DNA of 64,000 bases from Macrostomum lignano. Its lineage: Eukaryota. Positions 1 to 57,525 of this stretch are shown here, in pieces (the stretch's first letter is position 1; every line of letters begins with the position of its first letter). The stretch spans positions 248,001-312,000 of the forward strand of contig NIVC01001059.1 in NCBI GenBank assembly GCA_002269645.1. Reading direction: 5' to 3'. The position numbers and the translations under genes are program-made. The notes below the pieces were generated by a model. That model searched no databases and had not been told where the DNA came from. It saw only the letters and a list, made by a program, of their open reading frames with translations.

Positions 1-730
<730 letters not shown>

Positions 731-1729
731 TTTCCAGGTCGCTTTTTGAAGCCCGGGGAGCCGCTGCCGGCTTTTGTAACGCAAAATGCTCCGCAGAGCT
801 GCGGTGCCAGAGGAGAAAAACCCTGGGAGACCTCCCAGCCGCTAGGGCTTAGGGAGGAGACGCTAGATAGATCACCCGGGTTCCACTTGAATTCCCATTG
901 GCTGTAATTGTGATCCCCTTGCAATTTTTGCCACTTTTGTCGGCTCCTTTTCCCGATAAAACAGTGAAGTATATCTTCTTACCCCTGGGTAGAATTGGGA
1001 TAATTCGTGGGCGGGTTGCAGCGTCTGCGGCTGGTTTAAACGTCGATGGGAAATTTTAGTTGAAAAAGCGCGGCAAGTTGAATTTGCCGCGCTCCGATAT
1101 CACAAGCGGGACAGCTGATTGTTTGCTTATGACTCCCCTGGGTCAAGAGGGCGATTAGTAGGAGCCAATTGGATTAGCTTACCTTAGGCGGTGGGCTACC
1201 AGGCCGAAAACTGCGCGGCAGACGCGGCATTCTTCTAGAAAACAACTGAGAGCAGTTCAGAACGGCTCGATGAAAGCAGCTGGGCCTTATGCGCAGCAGC
1301 TTGTCCCATCGCTTGGGAATAATCAACGACACTGCAGCGATACAGGTTCTATAGTATTTCAGGGTTCGAAAGAAATGCTTTTTACTTGCATGCACGATTG
1401 AGTAAACGGCTGGAGTAATCATCGATGATAGTGACCGACATGTGTATGTTCCGGAAGCTGCATGCTTACGCAGGTGTCACAAAAAATTAACATTTTCATC
1501 ATGTATATAAATAAGCTATACTCGTATACAGTTAAGTGTACATGTACGAAACTCGAGGAGAGCATTAATTTAGGTCTGCATCAAGGACTGCTAATTAAGC
1601 ATAAATTCTGCAGTCCTTGGCTAATATATATGTTACATGTTCATGCAAATATCTACTATACAAATTGTTATAATGTATTGTTATATTATGCAGATATTAT
1701 GAATTAGTTCCATTTCAAGAAGTCTTACT

Positions 1730-3990
1730 TGACTCAGCTGCAGGGGGCACCGTGCGTCCGGAAACAGCGAGGAGGCGTTACCGCCCATTTCGCTAACCCC
1801 TGGCGACCACGGGCAGCTGGTGCTGCGGTGTCGCGCAGGGAGTTCCGGTGGCGCCGGTGTCCGCAGCGCAGTCCCCCTCCGGAGAGTCCAGGAGGTGGAT
1901 TGTCGCTCGCCCGGTAGCCCTTAGGTAGCGGACGAGCTGGCAGAGATTCTCGGGCCTGAAAACGTCGGAGAGGTCCGGGTTTGGGCCGAGGTAGGTGAGC
2001 CTGTCCTGAGTATAGGCGGGGCATTCACAGATAAAGTGCACCGCATTCTCGACACCGGAGAGGCAAAATGGGCATTCCTCACTGCGGATTTTTCCCTTGA
2101 GGTGACGATGCAAAACAGCCATGACCCGAGAGGGCCGCGATGCAGTGGTGTAGGTTTAGCTGCAGGATGTCCACTCCGGGGATTCCACGAGTGGTCCGGG
2201 CAGCTTTCTGCCAGCTCAAGGCGAGTTGTGCAGGAGAGCTGTCACTTCTGCCTCGCCGATAGCTCCAGGCTCCAGGTCCACGGGCTCCTCCCATGGTCGA
2301 GGGCGGGGCCGCCACCTGGGCGGCATTCTCGCTCTCGGCCCGGTTTTCCAGGGGGGGGGGCGCAGTGGTGACACTGGGCTGGGGGTTGCTGCGGTTGTTG
2401 GCCTTGGTGGTGTCCAGCAGCTGCTTCGTGCGCTGAGTCAGACCAGAGCGGATAGTGTTCCGGGCGGGTTTCCGGCCGTTTCCACGTCCGCCTGTTGCTG
2501 CAGCTTTCGCGGCTTTCCCTCTGACAGGTTCCACGTCCTCGGAGGGGTCGTGACGAACGGGAGCTTTTTTCCTGCGCGTTTCCGCCCGGCAGAGCCCCCG
2601 CTTGCCCGCTTACGCTTCTCCGGGGGCGGTGGATGGGTGGCGTCAGACTCAAAGCTAGAGCTGAATCTGCATCAGCCCGACAGAGATGAGGAACATGTCC
2701 GGATAGCGGAGCATCCGGAGCATTAGGCAGAAACCGTCTCCGCCCGGCTTGGAGATGGTCTCGTGAACTACGACGCCATTGGCCGGCAGCTCCGGGTTGG
2801 TAGCCAGTAGCAGGCGACGCAGCTCGTCGGTCTTGGTGATGGAGCTGCGAGCCGAAATCCAGGCACGGTGCCGGTGTGTCCGGGGTCGCTCGTCCTCCCT
2901 GTAGATAAACAGGTTTTCCAGCTCCGTACCCCAGTCGAAGGCTTTAAGCATCTCGAGGACCTGCTGCCCAGATCGACTGGCTGTCGGCGGGCTGGATATG
3001 GAGGGCTTGGTCCTCGACTTTCGTCTTTTGGGCTTGAATAGCGGTACCGCTCAAGGCCATCTTGACCAGGTGGGAGTCCAACCTGCGCCAGATAAGGTCG
3101 AGCTGTTCGGCCGTAAGAGCTGGCGTTTCCTGGCCTTGGATAATCAGGGCCGGCTGCCTCTTGGCCATAGCCGCATAGATGCGCTTCGGCTTGGTGGTTT
3201 GGCCAGCACCCTCCGCTTTGGATCGCTCCACGGCCGTAGGAGCTTCCACACGGGCAGAGGTCACATCACGGGAGCTAGGGGCCACCGCACCCTCCTCGGA
3301 GGCGGCCAGAGCTGGGGCAGCTTTCGTACTCCTCAGTTCTTCCGCTTTGCGCTGGAGAAAGGCTTTGTAGCGAGCAATGCTACGGGCCTTCTTTTTAAAA
3401 GTCTAAGGTCCGCTGTCCTGTTGTCCAGCCACTCCGGTATTGTCCTGAGTGGCGGCAGGGGCTGCCTGAGAGGCATCGGGGGTTCCGGTGTTGCGATTGT
3501 CCGGCTGGGCCGCGGTACCAACCTCGGTTGGTGCTCCAGCAGCCTCGGACGTGTCGGAAGTAAGTGAATACTCATGAGTCGCTGAAAGGCGAATGGGGAC
3601 TAGAGGTGAGAAGCCGCTGGGCCGTAACCCAAAAGCCAACAGCCAGGCCAAGAGATAGCGACCGCGGGGTGGCTTAAGCCCTTACTGGCCCGACCGCTAG
3701 CAACCGAGAAACTCCCCGGCTAAGAGCCCGGCTTGGAGAAACCAGAGGCCGAACCAAAGGACCATCAGCGCGGTGTTACACTGGGCCCTTGAGGGGGACA
3801 AGAGGCTGTCCGCGGAGCCTGCGGACTACCCTGTTAAGGTCAGAAGGTGATACCCATTCCTCAGAGCCGTGGCCAGAGGTACCTGATACGCACAGGTTCA
3901 CTTCCGGGCGGGGCCCGTACCCATGCAAATCGGCCAGCTGGCCACGGAAGGGTTGCCGTCGCGGGAGCCCAGTCAGTCCAGCAGCCCTAG
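1730..3990 (-). mobile_element. Internally deleted non-LTR retrotransposon (R1/LOA-like): frameshifted ORF1, start of the APE domain fused to the C-terminal zinc knuckle of ORF2
   Basis: ORF1-like segments (LRRLLLATNPEL) broken by a frameshift near 2965. The APE start [12 protein letters not shown] is directly followed by [21 protein letters not shown]. No RT motifs. Boundaries approximate. Confidence 0.75.
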
Positions 3991-5389
3991 AGCGAATGAT
4001 TAATAATGTGTACAAGACTTTAAAGTGGTTTTTCAGACTAGCGTAAGATAAAAAACTTGCAAATTTATGTGGAACATGGCTTCGGAAAGCAGACGAGCTA
4101 CGAAAAAAACTCGTTTTCGCTACCTCCGCATTGATTTGAATTCGCAATTTAACCCGGTTAATTAAAAACGCACGTGGGTCAGGCTCCATTAGTCTTTATG
4201 TCGATATAGTGATCGTCCTGTTGTCACAAATAGATTTTTAGGTCAGCCGCTTTCAAACGTGCACTTGTACTTTACTTACTGACTAGGACTAGTAAATACA
4301 CAAAAATGGCTGGTTGGACTTAACTAGTTTAGACTTAGATGAAGTGTAATTAATTGTAATTGATGTTTAGGTAGACTTACCACAGCTTAATGTTAAGCTA
4401 AGCTTGCATTTAATATCTTTTATAGAAAAAATTATTAGCTTAAATAGGCCTACATTGTTACATAAGTCTTGCATTTAGGAACTGTGCTATTTAGTGTTAC
4501 TGACAGAAAAGAACTTAAGTGTAGTCATTGGTGCCAAATTAAATTGAATACCTTTTAGCATTTTTAGTAGCCTAGCCTAGGCTAGACAGAGTATATATAT
4601 TCAGTTTTTTGCTCAGTATAGGCCTATCCCAAGACCCAAGTCTTTTTTTACTTAGTCTTTTTATTGCTCAGTACAATATAGCGTAGCGTAGGCCTAAAAA
4701 GAATTTAGCATTTATCATTATTATAGGCCCTAGCATTTCTATAGGCATTGGGATTAGTCTGGGCATTTAATTGAGTATAAATAATATAGGCCTAATTCAT
4801 AATGGATATGCATGGACCATATAAGGCTACCAAATTGGTAAGTTTTTATGACATTGATTACAATAGGCCCTAAATATATTCTTGGCTATCCTGTAGTTTC
4901 GCATGTTAAATTATTACCCCCACCCCCCACCACCCTTGAATAGAGGGCGAAATAATTCCGTAAAATAATTTAACGTGCAAAACTACAGGATAGCCATATT
5001 CTTATATTGCATATAAAATAAAATATGCTTATTATGCCATGAGATAAAAATGTAACAATTTAAATAAATGAGACAAATGGCAATGGTTCTTGATTATTAA
5101 TATTATTAAGAATAAGATAATAATGGGTCAAAGGTCTGCAACCATTTGATTGTAGGTGCTTTATATTAATAGCTTTTTGATAGGCCTAGAATATTCTAGA
5201 AGGCAGAATGTTCTAGAAAGAATAATGCAGGAATTTGAGTTACTATAGCTATTTAGTATATTTAGATTGGTTGTAGAAATTTCTAAAATAAAATGTTTAT
5301 TGCATGGTCAGAAAGTTTGTAAAGGTTTAGTATAAGATCACTACAATAGAAATAGATCATTCTTTATTATCTTGACATTAGGTATATAT

Positions 5390-5768
5390 TAGAGGTCGGA
5401 CGGGATTGAAATCTTTGGGTGGGATTGGGATTGGAAATAATTTTTTTCTCAGGATCGGGAATTGGATCAGGTCTTTTAGTGTATTGTCCATGTAAAGTTA
5501 AACAAAATTGAGAAAAGATTGTTAAGATCAAGAAGTAAAACACAATAAAATTGTTATTAAGTTTTTTAACCAACAAAGTAAATAATGTAACGAGTATAAG
5601 TTAAAGCAAAATACCTTCAAGTAATCACTAATTCTATAAATTATTAATCAAAAGACCTGTTCCCAAATCTTGAGTTTTTTATGTTCAGGATTCTGGTCCC
5701 GCAGGAATTCAATTTTCCTTGGGATCCCGAGAGTTCAGGATTGGGATCGGGATCCTGTCCGACCTCTA
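5390..5768. mobile_element. hAT-like MITE, 379 bp
   Basis: TIRs TAGAGGTCGGACGGGA / TCCTGTCCGACCTCTA (1 mismatch), 8-bp TSD GTATATAT (5382-5389, 5769-5776). The empty site is visible in the right copy near 25070. Confidence 0.93.
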
Positions 5769-6270
5769 GTATATATAGGTCATAAACATTATTTATAAAG
5801 GAATCAAAATTGTATGTATATTACAGTCTCACATTATATATTTAATCTTTATTCACTTTAGTAACCCTTTGAAACTTTCTCTTTCTGTCTCTTTCTTTCT
5901 TTTTCTAACTTCCTTTCTTTCTTTCATTCTTGTTCTTTTCCTAATATAGATTAATCTACCTTAACTAAAATGAGTTGTTCCATTTTTAGTATATTGGATT
6001 GATACTAGGCCTATGCTTAGGAATAAATTTATGCAATCTAGCTCGTATAGCTTTTGTTAAAAATTGAATAAAATCATTTTTTGCAATTTTGTTATAAAGT
6101 TAGAGCATAATAATATAGAATAAGCTAACATAAACAATGTAAAATAAAGCTTCCAAAATGCATTATACAATCATTATCAATCAATAAAAACATTTAAAGT
6201 AAGACAACACTAAACTCTGTCTTTAAAGGTCTAGCTTTTAGTGTTTTTGTCCTTGCATTCCATTCCCTAA

Positions 6271-6765
6271 TCCCCACAGTGGAATGACATCATCTGCACA
6301 TTCCACTCCATAATTCCCACAGTGAAATGATATTAGCTGTATATTCCACTCTCTAATCCTCAAAGTAGAATGACATCATCTGCACATTCCACTCCCTAAT
6401 CCCACAGTAGAATGACATCAGCTACACATTCCAATCCCTAATCCCACAGTGGAATGACATCAACTGCACATTCCACTCCCTATTCCCACAGTAGAATGAC
6501 ATCATTTGCACATTCCACTCCCTAATGCCACAGTGGACTGACATCATCTGCACATTCCAATCCCTAATCCCACAGTGGAATGACATCAACTGCACAATCC
6601 ACTCCCTAATGCCACAGTTGAATGACGTAATTTACACATTCCACTCCCTAATCCCACAGTGGAATGACATCATCTGCACATTCCACTCCCTAATCCCACA
6701 GTGGAATGACATCAACTGCACATTCCACTCCCTAATCCCACAGTGGAATGACATCATCCGCACAT
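6271..6765 (+). repeat. 39-bp minisatellite, about 12 units, containing the DEPDC1 splice acceptor and exon start
   Basis: Unit ~AATCCCACAG|TGGAATGACATCATCTGCACATTCCACTCCCT; the last unit grades into the DEP exon. Confidence 0.95.
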
Positions 6766-7085
6766 TCCGCACCTCGATGCCAGTCGGGCGGCACCGCAAA
6801 GGAGTCCGCGTGTTCGACAACTGCTTCCAGGGTTCAGACGCGGTGGACTGGCTGCAGCTGCACCTCAGCAAAAATCCCAGCTTCGGCAGCAACGTCGGCC
6901 GCCATCAGGTGGTGCAGCTGCTCGGCAAGTTTCACAAGAGCGGCGTCTTTCACGATGTTCGCGGCGGCGGCGGCAACAGCAAGTATGACACCGAGCCCTT
7001 CGAGGACAGCTCCAGCCGGCTGTACAAGTTTAGCCTCGTGGAAACCACCCTGTCTCCGCTGAGCGCGCGGCAGCCCATCACAGCT

Positions 7086-7616
7086 ATGGGTCTGTTGGTG
7101 GATGGGTGCTGTCTGCTGTACAGCAGTGGGTCTGTTGCTGGATGGGTGCTGTCTGCTGTACAGCAGTGGGTATGTTGCTGGATGGGTGCTGTCTGCTGTA
7201 CAGCCGTGGGTATGTTGCTGGATGGGTGCTGTCTGCTGTACAGCCGTGGGTTTGTTGGTGGATGGGTGCTGTCTGTTGTACAGCCGTGGGTTTGTTGGTG
7301 GATGGGTGCTGTCTGTTGTACAGCAGTGGGTCTGTTGCTGGATGGGTGCTGTCTGCTGTACAGCAGTGGGTATGTTGCTGGATGGGTGCTGTCTGCTGTA
7401 CAGCCGTGGGTATGTTGCTGGATGGGTGCTGTCTGCTGTACAGCTGTGGGTCTGTTGGTGGATGGGTGCTGTCTGCTGTTCAGCTGTGGGTCTGTTGCTG
7501 GATGGGTGCTGTCTGTTGTACAGCTGTGGGTCTGTTGGTGGATGGGTGCTGTCTGCTGTTCAGCTGTGGGTCTGTTGCTGGATGGGTGCTGTCTGCTGTA
7601 CAGCTGTGGGTCTGTT
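7086..7616 (+). repeat. 40-bp minisatellite, about 13 units (DEPDC1 intron)
   Basis: Unit GGGTCTGTTGCTGGATGGGTGCTGTCTGCTGTACAGCAGT. Confidence 0.97.
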
Positions 7617-8972
7617 ACGTAAACGATTTCCTGGAATACAAGCCCCCTCCATGACCCAGACCGGTCTGTCGGCCGCCGCAGCCTCCGTGCCGGGCCTTCC
7701 TGGTCCGTCAGGAAGGCGACCAGCCTCTCGGCTTCATCATCAGCTTCGGGCGGAGCCGCCTGCGCCACCCCTGTGAGGCGGCCACCAGAGCCGCGTGAAC
7801 CGCAGCAGCAGCTGCCACAGGCGCAGCCGGGCTCGGGGGCGCAGCCGGCCAGGAGGAGGAGGACCTGGCCTACATCTGGCTGGACTCGGCCCTCACCCGC
7901 ATGCGCGAGCTGCTGGAGCTTCGCTCAATTGACGCCTTGACCGACGCTCGGCAGCTGCGGGCCGACTTTGTCCGGGACAACCTGACTTCGGCTGGACAGG
8001 CCGGGGACCCGGCCGATTCGCTGCCGGCCTGGGTGAGCAACGCCGTCCGGTGCCTGGCCCGCTGGCCGGACACTGGCATGCCCAGCCTGCCGAGCTACGA
8101 GGGCTTCGAGCTGGAGATATTCGCCGAACTGTGCGAGTTCTTCGAGGGTGAGGGGGGGAGCCGCTGTGCTGGGCCGGTGCTCACTTAGTAGTCAGTTGCC
8201 TAGTAGTAGGTTATAGTAATCACCCAGTGCGCTCTGAGTGATAAGCTCAGCCGGCTCACCCAATCTGCGAATCCTCCGGCTTCACAGGCCGCGACGCGGA
8301 GCCGCTGGTGCCGCCGGACCTGCGCGACCTGTTCATCAACGTGCTGGCTCTGGCTGACAACCTGGCCAGCGAGCGGGCTGCGCACGACGCCGCCGCGCGT
8401 CGGAGACATTGGCGGCGCTTTCGCCGACACCCGATCGGCGCCCCGGCCATGACCAGCAGCTGCGCCGAGATCATGCGCCAGCTGACCGCGCCAGGCGCCT
8501 CCGCCACAGACGATGCCGACTGCAGCGACGCGAATTGGTCGCTGATGAATCAGCCGCGCTGCCGGCTGGCCAGAGTCTGCCACAGCGACTGCGAGTTCGA
8601 CGCTGAGGACGACGGGGAGGACGCCGACGACTTCGCCGCCTGCCGCCGCCGCCACTGGCCCAGACGCTCTCCGCTCCGTCGAAGCGCCACCTCCGAGGCT
8701 GACGGTCTCGGCCGCGAACAGGAGTTGCTGCAGTCCGTCCAAGACCCCGGCAATGCGGCCGATGGCGGTGTTCACCCGCTGGACGGCGACAGCCTGCTGG
8801 CCTCGGGCCTGCAGCTGGCTGCGCTGTTTTTGCCCCCCGGCCGGCGGCGCCGCCTTCACCAACTGCTGCGGGCCATGCACAAACTGGGAGCCAACCCGCG
8901 CCTGCGGCTCGACCCCGTGCTGCCTACGGCTCACGTGGTTCGTTTAAGTCCTAGTGGGTTGGAGGAGCAGGC

Positions 8973-9083
8973 AGAATCCCACCCTGCCATCTCCCCCGAA
9001 TCCCACCCTGCCATCTCCCCGAATCCCACCCTGCCATCTCCCCCGAATCCCACCCTGCCATCTCCCCCAAATCCCATCCTGCC
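8973..9083 (+). repeat. 23-bp C-rich minisatellite, truncated at the duplication breakpoint
   Basis: Unit GAATCCCACCCTGCCATCTCCCC. Confidence 0.95.
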
Positions 9084-13186: not shown

Positions 13187-20400
<7,214 letters not shown>

Positions 20401-21399
20401 TTTCCAGGTCGCTTTTTGAAGCCCGGGGAGCCGCTGCCGGCTTTTGTAACGCAAAATGCTCCGCAGAGCTGCGGTGCCAGAGGAGAAAAACCCTGGGAGA
20501 CCTCCCAGCCGCTAGGGCTTAGGGAGGAGACGCTAGATAGATCACCCGGGTTCCACTTGAATTCCCATTGGCTGTAATTGTGATCCCCTTGCAATTTTTG
20601 CCACTTTTGTCGGCTCCTTTTCCCGATAAAACAGTGAAGTATATCTTCTTACCCCTGGGTAGAATTGGGATAATTCGTGGGCGGGTTGCAGCGTCTGCGG
20701 CTGGTTTAAACGTCGATGGGAAATTTTAGTTGAAAAAGCGCGGCAAGTTGAATTTGCCGCGCTCCGATATCACAAGCGGGACAGCTGATTGTTTGCTTAT
20801 GACTCCCCTGGGTCAAGAGGGCGATTAGTAGGAGCCAATTGGATTAGCTTACCTTAGGCGGTGGGCTACCAGGCCGAAAACTGCGCGGCAGACGCGGCAT
20901 TCTTCTAGAAAACAACTGAGAGCAGTTCAGAACGGCTCGATGAAAGCAGCTGGGCCTTATGCGCAGCAGCTTGTCCCATCGCTTGGGAATAATCAACGAC
21001 ACTGCAGCGATACAGGTTCTATAGTATTTCAGGGTTCGAAAGAAATGCTTTTTACTTGCATGCACGATTGAGTAAACGGCTGGAGTAATCATCGATGATA
21101 GTGACCGACATGTGTATGTTCCGGAAGCTGCATGCTTACGCAGGTGTCACAAAAAATTAACATTTTCATCATGTATATAAATAAGCTATACTCGTATACA
21201 GTTAAGTGTACATGTACGAAACTCGAGGAGAGCATTAATTTAGGTCTGCATCAAGGACTGCTAATTAAGCATAAATTCTGCAGTCCTTGGCTAATATATA
21301 TGTTACATGTTCATGCAAATATCTACTATACAAATTGTTATAATGTATTGTTATATTATGCAGATATTATGAATTAGTTCCATTTCAAGAAGTCTTACT

Positions 21400-23661
21400 T
21401 GACTCAGCTGCAGGGGGCACCGTGCGTCCGGAAACAGCGAGGAGGCGTTACCGCCCATTTCGCTAACCCCTGGCGACCACGGGCAGCTGGTGCTGCGGTG
21501 TCGCGCAGGGAGTTCCGGTGGCGCCGGTGTCCGCAGCGCAGTCCCCCTCCGGAGAGTCCAGGAGGTGGATTGTCGCTCGCCCGGTAGCCCTTAGGTAGCG
21601 GACGAGCTGGCAGAGATTCTCGGGCCTGAAAACGTCGGAGAGGTCCGGGTTTGGGCCGAGGTAGGTGAGCCTGTCCTGAGTATAGGCGGGGCATTCACAG
21701 ATAAAGTGCACCGCATTCTCGACACCGGAGAGGCAAAATGGGCATTCCTCACTGCGGATTTTTCCCTTGAGGTGACGATGCAAAACAGCCATGACCCGAG
21801 AGGGCCGCGATGCAGTGGTGTAGGTTTAGCTGCAGGATGTCCACTCCGGGGATTCCACGAGTGGTCCGGGCAGCTTCCTGCCAGCTCAAGGCGAGTTGTG
21901 CAGGAGAGCTGTCACTTCTGCCTCGCCGATAGCTCCAGGCTCCAGGTCCACGGGCTCCTCCCATGGTCGAGGGCGGGGCCGCCACCTGGGCGGCATTCTC
22001 GCTCTCGGCCCGGTTTTCCAGGGGGGGGGGCGCAGTGGTGACACTGGGCTGGGGGTTGCTGCGGTTGTTGGCCTTGGTGGTGTCCAGCAGCTGCTTCGTG
22101 CGCTGAGTCAGACCAGAGCGGATAGTGTTCCGGGCGGGTTTCCGGCCGTTTCCACGTCCGCCTGTTGCTGCAGCTTTCGCGGCTTTCCCTCTGACAGGTT
22201 CCACGTCCTCGGAGGGGTCGTGACGAACGGGAGCTTTTTTCCTGCGCGTTTCCGCCCGGCAGAGCCCCCGCTTGCCCGCTTACGCTTCTCCGGGGGCGGT
22301 GGATGGGTGGCGTCAGACTCAAAGCTAGAGCTGAATCTGCATCAGCCCGACAGAGATGAGGAACATGTCCGGATAGCGGAGCATCCGGAGCATTAGGCAG
22401 AAACCGTCTCCGCCCGGCTTGGAGATGGTCTCGTGAACTACGACGCCATTGGCCGGCAGCTCCGGGTTGGTAGCCAGTAGCAGGCGACGCAGCTCGTCGG
22501 TCTTGGTGATGGAGCTGCGAGCCGAAATCCAGGCACGGTGCCGGTGTGTCCGGGGTCGCTCGTCCTCCCTGTAGATAAACAGGTTTTCCAGCTCCGTACC
22601 CCAGTCGAAGGCTTTAAGCATCTCGAGGACCTGCTGCCCAGATCGACTGGCTGTCGGCGGGCTGGATATGGAGGGCTTGGTCCTCGACTTTCGTCTTTTG
22701 GGCTTGAATAGCGGTACCGCTCAAGGCCATCTTGACCAGGTGGGAGTCCAACCTGCGCCAGATAAGGTCGAGCTGTTCGGCCGTAAGAGCTGGCGTTTCC
22801 TGGCCTTGGATAATCAGGGCCGGCTGCCTCTTGGCCATAGCCGCATAGATGCGCTTCGGCTTGGTGGTTTGGCCAGCACCCTCCGCTTTGGATCGCTCCA
22901 CGGCCGTAGGAGCTTCCACACGGGCAGAGGTCACATCACGGGAGCTAGGGGCCACCGCACCCTCCTCGGAGGCGGCCAGAGCTGGGGCAGCTTTCGTACT
23001 CCTCAGTTCTTCCGCTTTGCGCTGGAGAAAGGCTTTGTAGCGAGCAATGCTACGGGCCTTCTTTTTAAAAGTCTAAGGTCCGCTGTCCTGTTGTCCAGCC
23101 ACTCCGGTATTGTCCTGAGTGGCGGCAGGGGCTGCCTGAGAGGCATCGGGGGTTCCGGTGTTGCGATTGTCCGGCTGGGCCGCGGTACCAACCTCGGTTG
23201 GTGCTCCAGCAGCCTCGGACGTGTCGGAAGTAAGTGAATACTCATGAGTCGCTGAAAGGCGAATGGGGACTAGAGGTGAGAAGCCGCTGGGCCGTAACCC
23301 AAAAGCCAACAGCCAGGCCAAGAGATAGCGACCGCGGGGGTGGCTTAAGCCCTTACTGGCCCGACCGCTAGCAACCGAGAAACTCCCCGGCTAAGAGCCC
23401 GGCTTGGAGAAACCAGAGGCCGAACCAAAGGACCATCAGCGCGGTGCTACACTGGGCCCTTGAGGGGGACAAGAGGCTGTCCGCGGAGCCTGCGGACTAC
23501 CCTGTTAAGGTCAGAAGGTGATACCCATTCCTCAGAGCCGTGGCCAGAGGTACCTGATACGCACAGGTTCACTTCCGGGCGGGGCCCGTACCCATGCAAA
23601 TCGGCCAGCTGGCCACGGAAGGGTTGCCGTCGCGGGAGCCCAGTCAGTCCAGCAGCCCTAG
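21400..23661 (-). mobile_element. Second copy of the internally deleted R1/LOA-like element
   Basis: Duplicate of 1730-3990. Confidence 0.75.
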
Positions 23662-25570
23662 AGCGAATGATTAATAATGTGTACAAGACTTTAAAGTGGT
23701 TTTTCAGACTAGCGTAAGATAAAAAACTTGCAAATTTATGTGGAACATGGCTTCGGAAAGCAGACGAGCTACGAAAAAAACTCGTTTTCGCTACCTCCGC
23801 ATTGATTTGAATTCGCAATTTAACCCGGTTAATTAAAAACGCACGTGGGTCAGGCTCCATTAGTCTTTATGTCGATATAGTGATCGTCCTGTTGTCACAA
23901 ATAGATTTTTAGGTCAGCCGCTTTCAAACGTGCACTTGTACTTTACTTACTGACTAGGACTAGTAAATACACAAAAATGGCTGGTTGGACTTAACTAGTT
24001 TAGACTTAGATGAAGTGTAATTAATTGTAATTGATGTTTAGGTAGACTTACCACAGCTTAATGTTAAGCTAAGCTTGCATTTAATATCTTTTATAGAAAA
24101 AATTATTAGCTTAAATAGGCCTATATTGTTACAACTTACATAAGTCTTGCATTTAGGAACTGTGCTATTTAGTGTTACTGACAGAAAAGAACTTAAGTGT
24201 AGTCATTGGTGCCAAATTAAATTGAATACCTTTTAGCATTTTTAGTAGCCTAGCCTAGGCTAGACAGAGTATATATATTCAGTTTTTTGCTCAGTATAGG
24301 CCTATCCCAAGACCCAAGTCTTTTTTTACTTAGTCTTTTTATTGCTCAGTACAATATAGCGTAGCGTAGGCCTAAAAAGAATTTAGCATTTATCATTATT
24401 ATAGGCCCTAGCATTTCTATAGGCATTGGGATTAGTCTGGGCATTTAATTGAGTATAAATAATATAGGCCTAATTCATAATGGATATGCATGGACCATAT
24501 AAGGCTACCAAATTGGTAAGTTTTTATGACATTGATTACAATAAATATATTCTTGGCTATCCTGTAGTTTCGCATGTTAAATTATTACCCCCACCCCCCA
24601 CCACCCTTGAATAGAGGGCGAAATAATTCCGTAAAATAATTTAACGTGCAAAACTACAGGATAGCCATATTCTTATATTGCATATAAAATAAAATATGCT
24701 TATTATGCCATGAGATAAAAATGTAACAATTTAAATAAATGAGACAAATGGCAATGGTTCTTGATTATTAATATTATTAAGAATAAGATAATAATGGGTC
24801 AAAGGTCTGCAACCATTTGATTGTAGGTGCTTTATATTAGGGGCCTAATAGCTTTTTGATAGGCCTAGAATATTCTAGAAGGCAGAATGTTCTAGAAAGA
24901 ATAATGCAGGAATTTGAGTTACTATAGCTATTTAGTATTTTTAGATCGATTGTAGAAATTTCTAAAATGAAATGTTTATTGCATGGTCAGAAAGTTTATA
25001 AAGGTTTAGTATAAGGTCATTATAATAGAAACAGATCATTCTTTATAGTTTATTATCTAGACATTAGGTATATATAGGTCATAAACATTATTTATGAAGG
25101 AACCAAAATTGTATATATATTACAGTCTCACATTATATATTTATTCTTTATTCACTTTAGTAACCCTTTGAAACTTTCTCTTTCTGTCTCTTTCTTTCTT
25201 TTTCTAACTTCCTTTCTTTCTTTCATTCTTGTTCTTTTCCTAATATAGATTAATCTACCTTAACTAAAATGAGTTGTTCCATTTTTAGTATATTGGATTG
25301 ATACTAGGCCTATGCTTAGGAATAAATTTATGCAATCTAGCTCATATTGCTTTTGTTAAAAATTGAATAAAATCATTTTTTGCAATTTTGTTATAAAGTT
25401 AGAGCATAATAATATAGAATAAGCTAACATAAACAATGTAAAATAAAGCTTCCAAAATGCATTATACAATCATTATCAATCAATAAAAACATTTAAAGTA
25501 AGACAACACTAAACTCTGTCTTTAAAGGTCTAGCTTTTAGTGTTTTTGTCCTTGCATTCCATTCCCTAAT

Positions 25571-26064
25571 CCCCACAGTGGAATGACATCATCTGCACAT
25601 TCCACTCCATAATTCCCATAGTGAAATGATATTAGCTGTATATTCCACTCTCTAATCCTCAAAGTAGAATGACATCATCTGCACATTCCACTCCCTAATC
25701 CCACAGTAGAATGACATCAGCTACACATTCCAATCCCTAATCCCACAGTGGAATGACATCAACTGCACATTCCACTCCCTATTCCCACAGTAGAATGACA
25801 TCATTTGCACATTCCACTCCCTAATGCCACAGTGGACTGACATCATCTGCACATTCCAATCCCTAATCCCACAGTGGAATGACATCAACTGCACAATCCA
25901 CTCCCTAATGCCACAGTTGAATGACGTAATTTACACATTCCACTCCCTAATCCCACAGTGGAATGACATCATCTGCACATTCCACTCCCTAATCCCACAG
26001 TGGAATGACATCAACTGCACATTCCACTCCCTAATCCCACAGTGGAATGACATCATCCGCACAT
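25571..26064 (+). repeat. 39-bp acceptor-containing minisatellite (right copy)
   Basis: Same array as 6271-6765. Confidence 0.95.
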
Positions 26065-29000
26065 TCCGCACCTCGATGCCAGTCGGGCGGCACCGCAAAG
26101 GAGTCCGCGTGTTCGACAACTGCTTCCAGGGTTCAGACGCGGTGGACTGGCTGCAGCTGCACCTCAGCAAAAATCCCAGCTTCGGCAGCAACGTCGGCCG
26201 CCATCAGGTGGTGCAGCTGCTCGGCAAGTTTCACAAGAGCGGCGTCTTTCACGATGTTCGCGGCGGCGGCGGCAACAGCAAGTATGACACCGAGCCCTTC
26301 GAGGACAGCTCCAGCCGGCTGTACAAGTTTAGCCTCGTGGAAACCACCCTGTCTCCGCTGAGCGCGCGGCAGCCCATCACAGCTATGGGTCTGTTGGTGG
26401 ATGGGTGCTGTCTGCTGTACAGCAGTGGGTCTGTTGCTGGATGGGTGCTGTCTGCTGTACAGCAGTGGGTATGTTGCTGGATGGGTGCTGTCTGCTGTAC
26501 AGCCGTGGGTATGTTGCTGGATGGGTGCTGTCTGCTGTACAGCCGTGGGTTTGTTGGTGGATGGGTGCTGTCTGTTGTACAGCCGTGGGTTTGTTGGTGG
26601 ATGGGTGCTGTCTGTTGTACAGCAGTGGGTCTGTTGCTGGATGGGTGCTGTCTGCTGTACAGCAGTGGGTATGTTGCTGGATGGGTGCTGTCTGCTGTAC
26701 AGCCGTGGGTATGTTGCTGGATGGGTGCTGTCTGCTGTACAGCTGTGGGTCTGTTGGTGGATGGGTGCTGTCTGCTGTTCAGCTGTGGGTCTGTTGCTGG
26801 ATGGGTGCTGTCTGTTGTACAGCTGTGGGTCTGTTGGTGGATGGGTGCTGTCTGCTGTTCAGCTGTGGGTCTGTTGCTGGATGGGTGCTGTCTGCTGTAC
26901 AGCTGTGGGTCTGTTACGTAAACGATTTCCTGGAATACAAGCCCCCTCCATGACCCAGACCGGTCTGTCGGCCGCCGCAGCCTCCGTGCCGGGCCTTCCT
27001 GGTCCGTCAGGAAGGCGACCAGCCTCTCGGCTTCATCATCAGCTTCGGGCGGAGCCGCCTGCGCCACCCCTGTGAGGCGGCCACCAGAGCCGCGTGAACC
27101 GCAGCAGCAGCTGCCACAGGCGCAGCCGGGCTCGGGGGGCGCAGCCGGCCAGGAGGAGGAGGACCTGGCCTACATCTGGCTGGACTCGGCCCTCACCCGC
27201 ATGCGCGAGCTGCTGGAGCTTCGCTCAATTGACGCCTTGACCGACGCTCGGCAGCTGCGGGCCGACTTTGTCCGGGACAACCTGACTTCGGCTGGACAGG
27301 CCGGGGACCCGGCCGATTCGCTGCCGGCCTGGGTGAGCAACGCCGTCCGGTGCCTGGCCCGCTGGCCGGACACTGGCATGCCCAGCCTGCCGAGCTACGA
27401 GGGCTTCGAGCTGGAGATATTCGCCGAACTGTGCGAGTTCTTCGAGGGTGAGGGGGGGAGCCGCTGTGCTGGGCCGGTGCTCACTTAGTAGTCAGTTGCC
27501 TAGTAGTAGGTTATAGTAATCACCCAGTGCGCTCTGAGTGATAAGCTCAGCCGGCTCACCCAATCTGCGAATCCTCCGGCTTCACAGGCCGCGACGCGGA
27601 GCCGCTGGTGCCGCCGGACCTGCGCGACCTGTTCATCAACGTGCTGGCTCTGGCTGACAACCTGGCCAGCGAGCGGGCTGCGCACGACGCCGCCGCGCGT
27701 CGGAGACATCGGCGGCGCTTTCGCCGACACCCGATCGGCGCCCCGGCCATGACCAGCAGCTGCGCCGAGATCATGCGCCAGCTGACCGCGCCAGGCGCCT
27801 CCGCCACAGACGATGCCGACTGCAGCGACGCGAATTGGTCGCTGATGAATCAGCCGCGCTGCCGGCTGGCCAGAGTCTGCCACAGCGACTGCGAGTTCGA
27901 CGCTGAGGACGACGGGGAGGACGCCGACGACTTCGCCGCCTGCCGCCGCCGCCGCCACTGGCCCAGACGCTCTCCGCTCCGTCGAAGCGCCACCTCCGAG
28001 GCTGACGGTCTCGGCCGCGAACAGGAGTTGCTGCAGTCCGTCCAAGACCCCGGCAATGCGGCCGATGGCGGTGTTCACCCGCTGGACGGCGACAGCCTGC
28101 TGGCCTCGGGCCTGCAGCTGGCTGCGCTGTTTTTGCCCCCCGGCCGGCGGCGCCGCCTTCACCAACTGCTGCGGGCCATGCACAAACTGGGAGCCAACCC
28201 GCGCCTGCGGCTCGACCCCGTGCTGCCTACGGCTCACGTGGTTCGTTTAAGTCCTAGTGGGTTGGAGGAGCAGGCAGAATCCCACCCTGCCATCTCCCCC
28301 GAATCCCACCCTGCCATCTCCCGAATCCCACCCTGCCATCTCCCCGAATCCCACCCTGCCATCTCCCCCAAATCCCATCCTGCAATGTCCCCTAAATCCC
28401 ACCTTGCAATGTCCCCCGAATCCCACCCTGCCATCTCCCCGAATCCCACCCTGCCATCTCCCCCGAATCCCACCCTGCCATCTCCCCCAAATCCCATCCT
28501 GCAATGTCCCCTAAATCCCACCTTGCAATGTCCCCCGAATCCCACCCTGCCATCTCCCCCAAATCCCATCCTGCCATCCCCGAATCCCATCCTGCCATCT
28601 CCCCCAAATCCCATCCTGCCATCTACCCCAAATCCCATTTTGCAACGTCCTCCGAACCCCACCTTGCAATGTCCCCTAATTCCTACTATCCTCCAGGTGC
28701 TGCACTCTCTGGCGTCCTGCGTCCTACGTAGGAAGCCGGAAGTTCGAGAGCCGAGGCATCCGCAATCCGAGCAGCCGGACGTGTTCGCTCTTCAGCTGGT
28801 GTCGTTTATGACTGATCACTACTCCATGATCTTCCGGCCGCCTGCGGATTTGCGCGAATGCATCGAGGCCAGGCTGGCTGCCGTGCGAGAGCTGCAGCTG
28901 GTAAGCGCGTTTTAATGTATATGAGTATGACCACTGCTGTTAGCTATGACCACTGCTGCAAGCTATGACCACTGCTGCAAGCTATGACCACTGCTGCAAG

Positions 29001-44216: not shown

Positions 44217-44416
44217 ATGAATCATAGCACAGGCCTAGGCCTTAGCCTAACAGAAATGATTGGAACTCACATCAAATTGATCTGGCCATAGCCATCCGAG
44301 ACCTGCCTTTTGATGACGACGATGGAGGCTGCAAGACAAATTGTTGTTTAAAGTATTAGCAAACAAATCTAACACAATACTATAATCCAAAAGTCAGATA
44401 TTATACAATAAATAGC

Positions 44417-44728: not shown

Positions 44729-45031
44729 AGAGTTGGCTGAATAATATGTGGGGTTTGACGGGGCTTGAGTTTGCGGGGTATGGGGGGAGGCCCGCGTGGG
44801 GTGTGCGTACATTGTATGGAAAAAATCGATAACAGTTTAGGCCTTGGGGTGAACGGTGAAGGGGGTACACAGTGAAGGGGGCAATGTCCATATATGGAAA
44901 GAAAGAAGAGCACCATTCCACCAATAGGCAATAAAGACCGACCAACACTATCCTTCCTGGCTTTAGCACACTCATGCAACGCCCCAACCCCAAGCCAGAC
45001 AACTAAAGCTTGGCCTGTCCCGGGTGGCCCC

Positions 45032-46399: not shown

Positions 46400-46779
46400 G
46401 TGGCCCCTAGGGAATACAAAATTCCGCTTTGGCAATCCTAGGTTTGAAAAAGTTTTTTTTTCCCAGGACCCCGGGGAAAAAGCTGAAAATTCTCTGTCTC
46501 CCCCACATTTTAAAAGTCCAGGGAATTGGCTCTACCTTTGATGGTGCAATTTTGGGTTACAAAGTCATCTAATTTGATTATAAATGCACACTATATTTTA
46601 CATATGGAGTGTGACAATTGTACAGGCTAGTAACAATAGATATGCTTTTTTACTCATGTATAAGCTCATCAAAATTGGAACATCAAGCACACTTGATTGC
46701 GATGTAAATTGGGGAATGATAGGCTCTTACAGAGCTATGGCCTGACCCGAGGTACTGATACCAGGGTAGAAGGAAGGGG

Positions 46780-46930: not shown

Positions 46931-47484
46931 AAATACCCTTACGTTACGACCTGCTAACAGCTTCTGTTTTGTATCCCTGCAGGCTGGAGCGCTATAGCCT
47001 TCTACGAGTACTTAGTAGACTGCACTGCTTGCTTAGAAGATTAAGAAACCAAAGTAGGACAACTGGGTTATGATTTTCACTCGACAAGTATCTCAGCTGC
47101 AGATACTATACTACACCTTTTCACATTCAATTTTGATCAAAGTCTAGTTCTAAAAGAACTTAGCGGAAATTCAATTCAGACTGAGGATAATTTTGTCTAT
47201 GGCTAAACCTTACTTTGGTTAGAATGTTTTGAGCTGGGGTTAGACTGGGCCCAAGTCTAAATTGTCTGAATTTAATTTCTGCTAGTTTTTTTAGAACTGG
47301 ACTGCTCTAGAATGAATGATTGAATTATTGAAGTGGAATCAGGATCCAGATGGTCAATCCCAGGATTTAGGCCTAATCCCGGGATCCCAGGATTTTATTC
47401 ACTATCCAGCCCAAAACCCTGGGGTCAAAATCCCCGAAATTTTTTCGGGGTCCTCGGGGAGGGCTCCCCATGGTTGACATCCTA

Positions 47485-51750: not shown

Positions 51751-52384
51751 TTATAATAGAATTGTATTATAATCATTCCCTTTGGACTTAGGCCTAGCTT
51801 TTATTGTAGCCTGACCTGTAGGAGCTTACTTATTTATCTACTATGTGAAGCAAGTAACCTAGCACAAAATAAATACCCTATGACATTCATATATTTATCC
51901 TAATTATTTGCATAGCTAGCATTACCATTAGCAATAGTTCTTAATAAACAGATTGTGATAGATTTGATAGATGTGATGATAGAGAATAAATTGGCACAAA
52001 CACTAAAAAGATTAAATGTTTTATATTATAAGTAGGCCTAATTAGTTTCAAATCTATTTTTGTATTAGTATTTATGAATATAATTGATTAAACAAAAATA
52101 ATTTAATATATTATACAAGCTGTTGAAACCCGCGGATTTTGAACCCGGGGAATTCCAATACCCGGAACTACTTTTGCATGCATTCTGAAATCTAAGGCCA
52201 TACACAAACAAAAACTTGTTAATAGTTAGTAGGATAGAGGCAGACATAAAATGGAGCACATTCATGTAAAATTAGGGTTTGAGACATTGTTGGCTGGGGT
52301 ACTGCGCAGAATGTCAGGCAATGTCTGTCTGACTCTAAAACATATATAGCTAAACTCTGGTCTCTCCCTGACTCTCCCTACGTC

Positions 52385-55030: not shown

Positions 55031-57525
55031 TGCTAATTAATGATAGATAGAAAGAGAATAGATATAATAAATATTCAATATTGTAGCCATCTTGGTATAT
55101 GGTCATCTTGGTCTTATACCCTTTTGCATAAGGTTATAAATTTGATTTTTTATTAATTGTCATTGCCAAGAATTTTTTATTGATTATCAATTATAAAACA
55201 CTTGTTCCTATTGGTGAAATTCTTTTAATTTTATAAAAAAATATTTGGAAAATAATTTTTGTGTAACAACTACCACATGCTGTATTGTAGTTAAGCTGAT
55301 ATATATTGAAAGATATTTTTCCTTCCTAAAAAGACATTTTTCATATTAATAAGCAATATACTAATAGTAATACAAAATATTATTATTTTCTCCTTTACTC
55401 AACAAATCAATAATGAATTAAGAGTAGCTTACAATGCAATAAAATGAGTAAACTCCTTGTAATTTGTAGGCCTAGGCTACTGTTCTATAAGCCACAATGT
55501 GCATGTATTTTATATTGTGTTACTATGTTACTATTATGTAATAAGTTTTCAATATTTTACTTTTGAAAAATGGTATCCAGAAAGTAGATAACTAATATAA
55601 CTTAGTTCAAAAACCTTAGTAGTAGTCTCAAAGGAATACAATCCACTTCAGTACTCAGCCATTTTGGTCACAGCCACTTTGGTAACAAAGCAGAGCAACA
55701 CTTTATTTTTATGATATTTAGGTTTAGCAATAATTAGTTTAATAATTTTCATCTCAAATATCTTATTGCCACATATGGCTAAACTTTCTAGTTGAACTGC
55801 ATTATAATTCGTTTAAACTTGCGCATTAACTTTGTGAAAAAAAATTGAAGGCAAAGAAAATTAAGCAACCAGTGAGCTCAAGCATACATAGTCATAGAAA
55901 TTGAAAAATTAAATAATGAATGAAAAAGAAAGTAGATTCTATAATTTTAAGTCAGAGATTCTAATGTAAATGATAGGCCTACACAATATTTGGTCAACTA
56001 CAGGATGTCTCGGGTGCATGTATCTGACTCATCTGAAAATTAAAATAGATCGGCTAAAAATGGTTCACTTTTAAACAAGTTAAACAGATGCAGGTACGCA
56101 TGTGTTTTGTCGTTCTTTTTTTCAAGTTTGTTCGCACATTCTTTCAGAGCATATCAATTAATACATCTTTGTATTAACTCAGATCTATATTATATTATTC
56201 TAACTTGCTGTTGTTACCGAAGTGGACTGTTACCAATAATACAATAATACATCTAGAGGTAGTAGAGGGTTCTAGGCGCCTATAACAAATAATAAATAAT
56301 AAAACTTTAATAAGTTAGGCCTAGTATTCTACTATATCAAGTTATTTGTGAAATCTAACGGGCACCCATACCCAAATCTTCGAAGTCAACTTTGAACACA
56401 AAACGTAAAACCGACCGACCGAACGTACGTCCCGTGAAGTGCAAGCCGGGCCAGATTTTGTATAAAAAACAAAAGTATAACAATTTTTTTACTTTATTTT
56501 GTCTACCAAGTTATTGACACAAAACACTAAATTTTCATAAACTATAATTCTTTAGTGCGCATATTTTTCAACACGATTTGTTTAGTCGCCATGCTTTTCG
56601 TCGTCTTAGTATCAAGGAGGACTTAAGTGCAAGGACTACTTGAGTGGTCATTTTTGCCTAGTATATGATTTTCGACTTTGGTTTCGACTTAAGATCTATA
56701 CTGATTGAGCGACTAAGTGAGGTGAGGTCGTCCCAGATCTCGATGGAAGTAATGGGAATGCTTGTTAAAAATGATGGAAAAGAATTCCTCAACTTTTTTA
56801 AGACGACAATAGAACAAACAGCCAATGCTGACAGTTTGCGAACAAAATTTAAAAAATATATATTTCTCCACAGGAATTAATAATGATTGTACCACAGGTG
56901 ATGCCTGTTTAAACTTTAGTAAAAAATAACGCTAAGCAACAGAGCCAGTGCATGGGAATTATAACCTTATTTAGTAATGTATATTAGGAGTATTTTAAGA
57001 CTTAAGAGACAGCATGTCCTACTTGAACTTAAATAATGACTATGATTTTTGTTTAAAAGAGCAATAATATGAAGCACTTATAAAGTAAAATCAGTTAAAA
57101 TCTTACCTAAAAACACTAGACAGACCAGCATTACTTGATAGACGTACAGCTCCGCAAAAATGCGCACAATAACCGATATTCGGGCGCATAAAACTTGATT
57201 TATCTAAATCTACGTATATCTTCAACCTGCTAGGATGAGAGCAGACAGAGAGCGCGGTAGGGTATAGGGATGGGCAAGAGTATTGAGATTAAAACTTTAT
57301 AATAGATCGTAAAAATTAGAAAAATCGATAAACATAATCGACCGATATCAAAACCATCAGTTATTTATTTTTAATTATACTAAATCCTAGATCCTGAAGA
57401 GCATAAAAAGGGCAAAATGAGCTAAGTTGATCATCCATGCAGCAGAGAAAGCGTGATATTGAATACGTAACTTAAATGTATATAAATAAATATTATTCAG
57501 CCTGGGCCCTGGCTGGGATGGCTGC

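What the first reader, a model, noticed from the sequence alone, without database searches (positions are those of the whole stretch)
4445..6013. TA-GGCC-TA scars: a highly over-represented palindrome that is polymorphic between the duplicated copies
Seen: TAGGCCTA at 4445, 4619, 4689, 4787, 5181 and 6006 within ~1.6 kb of AT-rich DNA. My rough expectation at ~26% GC is about 0.01 copy per 2 kb. It recurs at 47368, 51789, 52033, 55467, 55974 and 56316. Variants: TA-GGCCC-TA (4724, 4864), TA-GGGGCC-TA (24839), TA-GGCGCC-TA (56273). Two sites are filled in one copy and empty in the other: 4864 is a plain TA near 24541, and 24839 is a plain TA near 5167. In both, a TA is duplicated around a GG..CC core. 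Established: TA-targeting cut-and-paste transposons leave TA-(terminal bases)-TA footprints. Inference: repeated hit-and-run insertion and excision of an unidentified TA-specific element with GG...CC ends. Alternative: collapsed TAGG...CCTA ends of the hAT-like elements seen here.
Basis: partly seen in the sequence, partly recalled or inferred. Interest (0 to 1): 0.75.

Follow-up and report, generated by a model that had tools for sequence, protein, structure and literature searches.

The report
Transposon excision scars TA-GGCC-TA in flatworm DNA
An 8-letter palindrome, TAGGCCTA, is about 30 times too frequent in the AT-rich DNA of this (probably Macrostomum flatworm) window and behaves like the small scar a TA-targeting cut-and-paste transposon leaves when it jumps out; this is an ordinary mechanism, seen here at unusual density and very recently active, but the transposon itself was not found.

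Summary
TAGGCCTA occurs 18 times in the window against about 1 expected. After one copy of a ~9 kb duplication is removed, 12 independent sites remain against 0.24-0.38 expected in 22.6 kb of AT-rich DNA (P about 1e-14 to 1e-17).

Both filled/empty claims hold. TA-GGCCC-TA at 4864 faces a single TA at 24542-24543. TA-GGGGCC-TA at 24838 faces a single TA at 5167-5168. Once the insert is removed, the flanks match 122/122.

This is the anatomy of a Tc1/mariner-type excision footprint: a duplicated TA target enclosing 2-3 terminal bases from each transposon end. Termini GGC...GCC with 3-nt overhangs would predict GGCC, GGCGCC and GGC/GCC. The first two are clearly present; GGC/GCC is not enriched on its own.

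The sites are young (no excess of one-mismatch copies), clustered (8 of 15 in 1.65 kb), and two arose after the duplication.

Footprints of hAT, PIF/ISL2EU and piggyBac types are excluded by the target duplication. No element with TA|GG...CC|TA ends is in the window, and no further DNA of this genome could be reached. The element's identity and the genome-wide test therefore stay open. The mechanism is known and the responsible family is unidentified, so interest is moderate.

The parts
4445..4452 (.). TAGGCCTA scar, shared with copy 2 at 24116-24123
4568..4584 (.). Compound array TAGCCTAGCCTAGGCTA: three adjacent TA-(GCC/GGC)-TA units, candidate 3-nt footprints. Also in copy 2 at 24246-24262
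   Evidence: The 7-mers alone are not significantly enriched (6 against 3)
4619..4626 (.). TAGGCCTA scar, shared with copy 2 at 24297-24304
4679..4696 (.). Compound array TAGCGTAGCGTAGGCCTA, with the TAGGCCTA at 4689-4696. Also in copy 2 at 24357-24374. The GCG units are not explained by the model
4724..4732 (.). TAGGCCCTA variant scar, shared with copy 2 at 24402-24410
4787..4794 (.). TAGGCCTA scar, shared with copy 2 at 24465-24472
4864..4872 (.). TAGGCCCTA scar present only in copy 1 (filled site)
24542..24543 (.). Single TA: the empty counterpart of the 4864 scar
   Evidence: (122/122 match)
5167..5168 (.). Single TA: the empty counterpart of the 24838 scar
   Evidence: (122/122 match)
24838..24847 (.). 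TAGGGGCCTA scar present only in copy 2 (filled site)
5181..5188 (.). TAGGCCTA scar, shared with copy 2 at 24860-24867
6006..6013 (.). TAGGCCTA scar, shared with copy 2 at 25305-25312
44230..44249 (.). CAGGCCTAGGCCTTAGCCTA: a compound array that looks partly decayed
47368..47375 (.). TAGGCCTA scar inside GGGATCCC-rich repeat DNA
51789..51796 (.). TAGGCCTA scar
52033..52040 (.). TAGGCCTA scar
55467..55479 (.). TAGGCCTAGGCTA: a 4-nt scar and a 3-nt scar sharing one TA
55974..55981 (.). TAGGCCTA scar
56273..56282 (.). TAGGCGCCTA: the product expected if both 3-nt overhangs (GGC and GCC) are kept in full
56316..56323 (.). TAGGCCTA scar

Best explanation
The TA-GGCC-TA words are excision footprints of a TA-targeting cut-and-paste DNA transposon. 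It behaves like IS630/Tc1/mariner, and its termini begin GG, most simply 5'-GGC...GCC-3'.

Inferred steps, following the established Sleeping Beauty/mariner chemistry:
1. The element integrates at a TA and duplicates it.
2. On excision the transposase cuts the non-transferred strand 2-3 nt inside each end. Each donor flank then keeps TA plus a short G/C 3' overhang.
3. End joining seals the gap. Pairing of the self-complementary terminal GC of two GGC overhangs gives TA-GGCC-TA, the dominant product. Keeping both overhangs gives TA-GGCGCC-TA. Full overlap with a central mismatch gives TA-GGC-TA or TA-GCC-TA. Trimming or fill-in errors give GGCCC and GGGGCC.
4. Each scar adds a new TA, so repeated hits build adjacent compound scars.

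Shown directly: the enrichment, the TA duplication, the single TA at both empty sites, the youth of the sites, their clustering, and activity after the duplication. Inferred: the element, its termini, the stagger of the cuts, and local hopping or a hot spot as the cause of the cluster upstream of the DEP-domain gene.
For: Enrichment:
- 18 against 0.99 expected.
- 12 non-redundant sites against 0.24-0.38 expected, P 1e-14 to 5e-17, and the top TA...TA word that is not a microsatellite.
- All 8 GGCC in the 2.5 kb AT-rich block 4001-6500 lie in TA-GGCC(C)-TA.

Filled and empty sites:
- Both filled/empty pairs are TA-core-TA against a single TA, with 122/122 identical flanks.
- The flanks of the 16 sites are unrelated, so this is not a repeat-family consensus. 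The reconstructed targets share nothing but TA in AT-rich DNA.

Core composition and arrays:
- All extra core bases are G or C (C, GG, CG), as expected if they come from the element's ends.
- GGCGCC at 56273 equals GGC plus GCC.
- Compound arrays share TAs at 4568, 44230 and 55467.

Age and clustering:
- Exact copies (18) outnumber all one-mismatch variants (13). Exact plus one-mismatch together are 31 against about 29 expected, so there is no halo of decayed copies and the sites are young.
- In 4400-5250 the two duplicate copies differ by one substitution, one 7-bp indel and two scars.
- 8 of 15 sites fall in 1.65 kb (binomial P 3e-6).

Mechanism and context:
- The literature describes 3-nt 3' overhangs on donor flanks, end-joining footprints and a TA duplication for Sleeping Beauty and mariner (PMC7827188).
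- Tc1/mariner termini vary widely, and potentially intact TA-duplicating copies exist in Macrostomum lignano (PMC10379824 Table S1).
- The host is an animal, most likely a macrostomid flatworm.
Against: No element with TA|GG...CC|TA inverted termini occurs in the 64 kb. The best terminal-repeat match among TAGG/CCTA pairs within 8 kb is 12/16, and the three such pairs look like chance.

The only Tc1/mariner family that the searched literature reports for M. lignano ends CTGGG.

The predicted 3-nt scars TAGGCTA/TAGCCTA are not significantly enriched on their own (6 against about 3, P about 0.08).

The GCG units at 4679-4688 and the cores GGCCC and GGGGCC need extra end-processing assumptions.

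The extreme clustering within 1.6 kb is tighter than the local hopping I recall for known Tc1/mariner elements.

The absence of decayed copies would also fit a motif kept by selection.

The genome-wide count could not be made.
Confidence: 0.68

Rival explanations
1. TAGGCCTA is a functional palindromic site, for example the binding site of a dimeric DNA-binding protein, kept by selection in regulatory DNA upstream of the DEP-domain gene and elsewhere.
For: The motif is a perfect palindrome. Exact copies are not accompanied by an excess of one-mismatch copies. The main cluster lies 0.8-2.3 kb upstream of the first DEP-domain coding exon.
Against: Selection does not explain how sites arise as 7-8 bp insertions that duplicate a TA. 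It does not explain cores of variable length (GGCC, GGCCC, GGGGCC, GGCGCC). It does not explain compound arrays sharing TAs. Two sites differ between nearly identical duplicates, which does not look like constraint.
Confidence: 0.07
2. The scars are templated insertions made during polymerase-theta-type end joining. Breaks at TA microhomologies copy GGCCTA from a nearby existing TAGGCCTA, so one founder motif multiplies locally without any transposon passing through each site.
For: The clustering is tight, 8 of 15 sites in 1.65 kb. Inserts are bounded by 2-bp TA microhomology. That such repair copies nearby sequence rests on my own knowledge of work in Caenorhabditis elegans and was not tested here.
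Against: Six further sites are scattered over 47-56 kb, far from any template. The two new inserts are GGCCC and GGGGCC. GGGGCC matches no neighbouring copy; GGCCC does match the copy 140 bp upstream at 4724. A recurrent source of breaks exactly at TA would still be needed, and a TA-specific transposase is the obvious one.
Confidence: 0.07
3. The words are collapsed TAGG...CCTA ends of the hAT-like elements in the window, left by internal deletion or imprecise excision.
For: A hAT-like MITE sits in the cluster at 5390-5768, begins TAG and ends CTA, and inserted after the duplication, so hAT activity is recent.
Against: Its ends are TAGAGG...CCTCTA, not TAGG...CCTA, and it has an 8-bp duplication GTATATAT. 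No scar is flanked by an 8-bp duplication. Both empty sites are a bare TA. From established knowledge, hAT excision removes the whole element and alters the duplicated flanks.
Confidence: 0.02
4. The excess arises by chance, from local composition, or from an assembly artefact.
For: Twelve of the 18 copies lie in the duplicated segment (six sites present in both copies), which inflates the raw count.
Against: After removing one duplicate copy and modelling only AT-rich DNA, the count is still 12 against about 0.3. The motif matches no sequencing adapter I know of. The sites are embedded in unique, unrelated flanks.
Confidence: 0.02

Closest known systems
Canonical excision footprints of Sleeping Beauty and mariner (Mos1, Hsmar1)
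   Same: A duplicated TA encloses a few bases derived from the transposon's termini. These come from 3-nt 3' overhangs left on the donor flanks and are sealed by end joining, and several footprint variants arise per family (PMC7827188).
   Different: The core here is G/C only (GGCC dominant), which implies termini GG(C)...(G)CC that I could not match to any described family. The dominant product is a perfect 8-bp palindrome. The element is absent from the window. The density, 8 scars in 1.65 kb, is unusual.
Tc1 footprints in Caenorhabditis elegans (TA-CA-TG-TA type; from my own knowledge, not retrieved here)
   Same: The layout is two plus two terminal bases between duplicated TAs, which is the shape TA-GG-CC-TA would have with a 2-nt stagger.
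   Different: The terminal bases differ. TACATGTA is itself mildly enriched in this window (5 against 0.44) and could mark a second, Tc1-like family.
DD37E/Mosquito Tc1/mariner element of Macrostomum lignano (PMC10379824)
   Same: It has a TA duplication. It has 35 copies, 6 of them intact, in what is probably the host genus. This shows that TA-duplicating elements with potentially intact copies exist there.
   Different: Its termini are CTGGG...CCCAG, which would leave CTG/CAG-type scars, not GGCC.
ISL2EU and other PHIS (PIF/Harbinger-related) transposons
   Same: Their inverted repeats usually begin with GG or GGG, and they insert in AT-rich targets (PMC4482050).
   Different: Their duplications are AT (target A|AT|T), TWA, ANT, CWG or TNA. 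Here the duplicated dinucleotide is unambiguously TA.

Membership tests
Tc1/mariner-type (IS630-Tc1-mariner) excision footprint | Scar flanked on both sides by the duplicated TA target | tested here: met
   All 16 non-redundant sites are TA-core-TA. Twelve of 15 AGGCCT in AT-rich DNA carry the T...A flanks.
Tc1/mariner-type (IS630-Tc1-mariner) excision footprint | Unoccupied allele or paralogue shows a single TA | tested here: met
   Two of two informative pairs: 4864 against 24542-24543, and 24838 against 5167-5168, with 122/122 flanks.
Tc1/mariner-type (IS630-Tc1-mariner) excision footprint | Core bases equal the terminal 2-3 nt of an identified element's inverted repeats | not testable with these tools
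   No such element is in the window. No other DNA of this genome could be reached.
Tc1/mariner-type (IS630-Tc1-mariner) excision footprint | Element family with inverted repeats and a DDE/D transposase present in the genome | tested here: inconclusive
   None is visible in the 64 kb window: no TA-flanked GG... inverted termini, and none of the 10 longest ORFs scanned against Pfam is a transposase; the remaining ORFs were not scanned. The literature shows another TA-duplicating family in M. lignano, but with CTGGG ends.
hAT excision footprint | Remnant of an 8-bp target duplication around the scar, with element bases fully removed | tested here: not met
   No 8-bp direct repeats flank the scars. 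The empty sites differ only by TA plus core. The resident hAT MITE has the duplication GTATATAT and ends TAGAGG...CCTCTA.
PIF/Harbinger, ISL2EU (PHIS) footprint | Target duplication TWA (PIF) or AT within AATT (ISL2EU) | tested here: not met
   The only rotations of the inserted bases consistent with the empty sites duplicate TA. Family definitions are from PMC4482050.
piggyBac-type excision | TTAA target and precise excision without a scar | tested here: not met
   Site 4864 has no TTAA in its empty form (ACAATAAATAT), and a scar is present.
Conserved palindromic protein-binding motif | Positional conservation across species, or occupancy by a protein | not testable with these tools
   No orthologous sequence or binding data were available. 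The mode of origin by insertion argues against this as the primary explanation.

The most novel reading that the evidence does not exclude
The scars mark an undescribed TA-specific DNA transposon family with GGC...GCC termini that is active now in the germline of a Macrostomum flatworm. It hops so often and so locally that, in this 1.6 kb promoter-proximal stretch, scar formation is as frequent as point substitution or more so. It keeps creating new copies of one 8-bp palindrome.

A more exotic version is not excluded: the cutting is done by a transposase-derived host nuclease, and no mobile element passes through each site.
Probability: 0.4. Interest if true: 0.55.

Novelty: new member of a known kind. 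Interest (0 to 1): 0.4.

Why it matters
If the reading is right, the window records a DNA transposon that was active very recently. Two new scars arose between duplicates that otherwise differ by about 0.07%, in a genus used as a regeneration and stem-cell model. An endogenous, highly active TA-specific element would be a mutator to watch for in laboratory lines and a possible basis for a native gene-transfer tool.

The case also shows that excision scars can be a locally dominant mutation class, and that they can seed many copies of a perfect palindrome from which regulatory sites could later evolve.

Finally, the scars allow the termini of an unseen element to be inferred. That gives a precise search key, TA|GGC...GCC|TA, for finding it in the full genome.

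Tried and rejected
1. Search for the element in the window. I compared the 16-24 nt after every TAGG with the reverse complement before every CCTA within 8 kb, and compared all such ends with each other. Only three 12/16 pairs that look like chance, plus tandem-repeat matches, came out. A general inverted-repeat scan found a hAT MITE, a 114-bp MITE (4883-4996) and a 1.4 kb element (45018-46413) whose repeats start TCCC. None has TA|GG ends.

2. Paralogous empty sites for the other scars. None exists in the window beyond the two already known.

3. Reaching more DNA of the same genome.
- The closest named protein (M. lignano, P0005) has no contig on record.
- Contigs carrying related reverse transcriptases are short element bodies without the motif.
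- A metagenome scan for the hAT MITE terminus found nothing.
- The window's own decarboxylase protein is not in the protein collection: the best match is 83% identical.

4. Literature. There was no relevant hit for TAGGCCTA with transposon or footprint terms, or for AGGCCT with Macrostomum. The only retrievable M. lignano Tc1/mariner termini are CTGGG.

5. Ideas rejected on the sequence:
- a telomere-repeat junction (TTAGG|CCTAA), because the flanks are not T...A consistently;
- palindromic additions from hairpin opening of a flank, because the empty sites contain only TA and not TAGG;
- hAT, PIF, ISL2EU and piggyBac origins, because of the target duplication.

6. Extended target consensus. 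None is seen beyond TA.

7. No RNA family matches the window at gathering score.

Full report
**What the window is.** The 64 kb alternate between GC-rich segments (50-63% GC) and AT-rich segments (32-40% GC). They are packed with minisatellites of 19-52 bp period and (GATA)n arrays.

The window encodes:
- a DEP-domain exon, a non-LTR reverse transcriptase fragment and a C2H2 zinc finger;
- two bacterial-like genes interrupted by introns.

The only named eukaryotic relatives of the decarboxylase (83% identity) and of the reverse transcriptase (85, 72 and 60%) are proteins of the flatworm Macrostomum lignano. The window is therefore animal DNA, most likely from a Macrostomum species.

**The observation.** TAGGCCTA occurs 18 times, against 0.99 expected from dinucleotide-preserving shuffles (largest 4).

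Twelve of the 18 belong to two copies of a ~9 kb duplication, 1-9080 against 19591-28383. That leaves 12 independent exact sites. In the 22.6 kb of non-redundant AT-rich DNA (37% GC) the expectation is 0.24-0.38 under Markov models of order 1-3, even with the motif instances masked from the background. This gives Poisson P between 1e-14 and 5e-17.

Among all TA-N3-6-TA words, TAGGCCTA is the most over-represented apart from the GATA microsatellite. The signal belongs to the full 8-mer:
- 12 of 15 AGGCCT hexamers carry the T...A flanks;
- all eight GGCC in the block 4001-6500 sit inside TA-GGCC(C)-TA.

The flanks of the sites are unrelated to each other. The word is therefore not part of a dispersed repeat consensus.

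**Filled and empty sites.** The two duplicate copies are almost identical. About 24 substitutions separate them over 9 kb, and 18 of these are concentrated in a patch at 5260-5850 around a hAT MITE insertion.

Within 4400-5250 the copies differ by one substitution, one 7-bp indel and two motif insertions.
- Copy 1 has ACAA-TAGGCCC-TAAATAT where copy 2 has ACAA-TAAATAT (TA at 24542-24543).
- Copy 2 has TATAT-TAGGGGCC-TAATAG where copy 1 has TATAT-TAATAG (TA at 5167-5168).

Queries in which the motif is replaced by a single TA match the other copy at 122 of 122 positions. The only rotations of the inserted bases that fit the empty sites are those that duplicate TA. This rules out AT, TWA, TTAA and 8-bp duplications.

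**Further properties.**
- *Age.* Exact copies (18) outnumber all one-mismatch variants (13). Exact plus one-mismatch together are 31 against about 29 expected, so there is no halo of decayed copies. The sites are either young or constrained. With 12 of at most 15 copies still intact, they are younger than roughly 3% neutral divergence (inference).
- *Clustering.* Eight of the 15 non-redundant sites that lie outside the removed duplicate copy fall in 1.65 kb, 4400-6050 (binomial P 3e-6). This stretch is 0.8-2.3 kb upstream of the DEP-domain coding exon.
- *Target.* The reconstructed targets show no consensus beyond TA in AT-rich DNA.
- *Compound arrays.* Several arrays share TAs: TAGCCTAGCCTAGGCTA (4568), TAGGCCTAGGCTA (55467), CAGGCCTAGGCCTTAGCCTA (44230) and TAGCGTAGCGTAGGCCTA (4679). 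The 7-mers TAGCCTA/TAGGCTA are not significantly enriched by themselves (6 against about 3). Only their arrangement is suggestive.

**Mechanism.** For Sleeping Beauty and mariner, the transposase nicks the non-transferred strand three nucleotides inside the element. The flanking donor DNA keeps 3-nt 3' overhangs, end joining then leaves a footprint, and integration duplicates a TA (PMC7827188).

Applied here, an element with termini 5'-GGC...GCC-3' would leave two GGC overhangs. The predicted products are:

| Joining route | Product | Seen here |
|---|---|---|
| Pairing of the self-complementary terminal GC, with 1-nt fill-in on each strand | TA-GGCC-TA | 12 sites, the dominant form |
| Both overhangs kept in full | TA-GGCGCC-TA | 56273 |
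| Full overlap with a central G:G mismatch | TA-GGC-TA or TA-GCC-TA | the units of the compound arrays |
| One-base trimming or addition | GGCCC, GGGGCC | 4724, 4864, 24838 |

A 2-nt stagger with GG...CC ends and occasional added bases fits almost as well. However, all five extra bases are G or C, which favours an origin from the element. This whole paragraph is inference from anatomy plus established chemistry. The element has not been seen.

Because cut-and-paste movement leaves a scar at each departure without raising copy number, scars can outnumber resident copies. That makes the element's absence from 64 kb unsurprising. The tight cluster is best explained by very local re-insertion of one or a few copies, or by a preferred open-chromatin target. 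This is the weakest part of the account.

**Alternatives.**
The MITE at 5390-5768 ends TAGAGG...CCTCTA and has the 8-bp duplication GTATATAT at 5382-5389 and 5769-5776. The scars have neither feature.
- *PHIS elements.* They often start with GG, but they duplicate AT, TWA, ANT, CWG or TNA (PMC4482050).
- *piggyBac.* It needs TTAA and excises precisely.
- *A selected binding site.* This would explain the lack of decayed copies. It would not explain the origin by insertion, the variable cores or the compound arrays.
- *Templated repair copying a neighbouring motif.* This would explain the clustering. It would not explain the six scattered sites or the variant cores, and it still needs a TA-specific source of breaks.
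- *Chance and duplication inflation.* These are excluded by the non-redundant statistics.

**What stayed open.** No element with TA|GG...CC|TA ends is in the window. The only M. lignano Tc1/mariner termini I could retrieve are CTGGG, with TA duplication and 35 copies of which 6 are intact (PMC10379824 Table S1). That family shows the genus hosts TA-duplicating elements with potentially intact copies, but it is not this one.

Attempts to fetch more DNA of the genome failed.

**Verdict.** The kind of feature is well known: excision footprints of a TA-specific cut-and-paste transposon. The family, the palindromic dominant product, the density and the recency are what is new. I rate the interest as moderate.

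Noticed in passing
window 57652-61275 (minus strand) and 42411-43642 (minus strand): There are two bacterial-like genes with spliceosomal-type interruptions. The first is an Orn/Lys/Arg decarboxylase in at least 4 exons. It is 65% identical to Burkholderiales proteins and 82-85% to a Macrostomum lignano protein, and one intron is filled by a 20-bp minisatellite. The second is a polyprenyl synthetase in 2 exons, whose best hits are 44% identical and come from unnamed metagenome sequences; the named ones further down the list are bacterial. Both are candidates for horizontal gene transfer into the flatworm lineage. They sit on the same contig as animal repeats, so they are not contamination.
   Followed up: partly
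window 1-9080 and 19591-28383: A ~9 kb segment is present twice, 19.6 kb apart. Outside one patch the copies diverge by only about 0.07%. They also differ by (GATA)n length (79 against 99 units) and a few small indels. This is a very young segmental duplication, ongoing gene conversion, or an assembly join of haplotypes or homeologues.
   Followed up: partly
window 5390-5768 (duplication 5382-5389 and 5769-5776): A 379-bp hAT-like MITE has inverted repeats TAGAGGTCGGAC(G/A)GGAT and the 8-bp target duplication GTATATAT. It is present only in copy 1 of the duplication; copy 2 has the intact empty site. hAT activity is therefore recent too. It is the only copy of the family in the window.
   Followed up: yes
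window 5260-5353 and 5768-5845, against 24939-25144: About 14 of the 24 substitutions between the duplicates are packed into the ~100 bp on each side of the MITE insertion; another four fall inside the MITE span, where the alignment is unreliable. That is roughly 6-10% divergence against about 0.07% elsewhere. It suggests a gene-conversion tract from a diverged third copy, or error-prone repair linked to the insertion.
   Followed up: no
window 1539, 37443, 40311, 40317, 41368, 47842, 48339, 51048, 51656, 63454: TACATGTA is also enriched (5 against 0.44 expected in AT-rich non-redundant DNA, P about 9e-5). This is the form expected for footprints of a Tc1-like element with CA...TG ends. Some copies are tandem, and 51048 and 51656 share similar flanks and may belong to one repeat family, so the signal is weaker than for TAGGCCTA.
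   Followed up: partly
window 4883-4996 (copy 2: 24554-24667) and 45018-46413: Two more elements with inverted repeats are present. One is a 114-bp MITE with 33-nt arms (TGGCTATCCTGTAG...) flanked by TATTCT. The other is a ~1.4 kb element with 36-nt arms starting TCCC, one arm of which contains TAGGGGCC. Neither has TA|GG termini.
   Followed up: partly
window 6256-6768, 7080-7616, 17278-18237, 33423-34317, 40621-41504, 57888-58603, 61560-62451 and others: The density of minisatellite arrays is exceptional: periods of 19-52 bp and up to 48 copies. Several lie inside open reading frames or introns of genes, including the ORF that holds the DEP-domain exon.
   Followed up: no
window 15037-15912: A fragment of a non-LTR retrotransposon reverse transcriptase (RVT_1) is present. 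Its closest named relatives are M. lignano proteins. Many 50-77% identical relatives sit on short ENA/JGI metagenome contigs, which suggests flatworm DNA in environmental data sets.
   Followed up: partly
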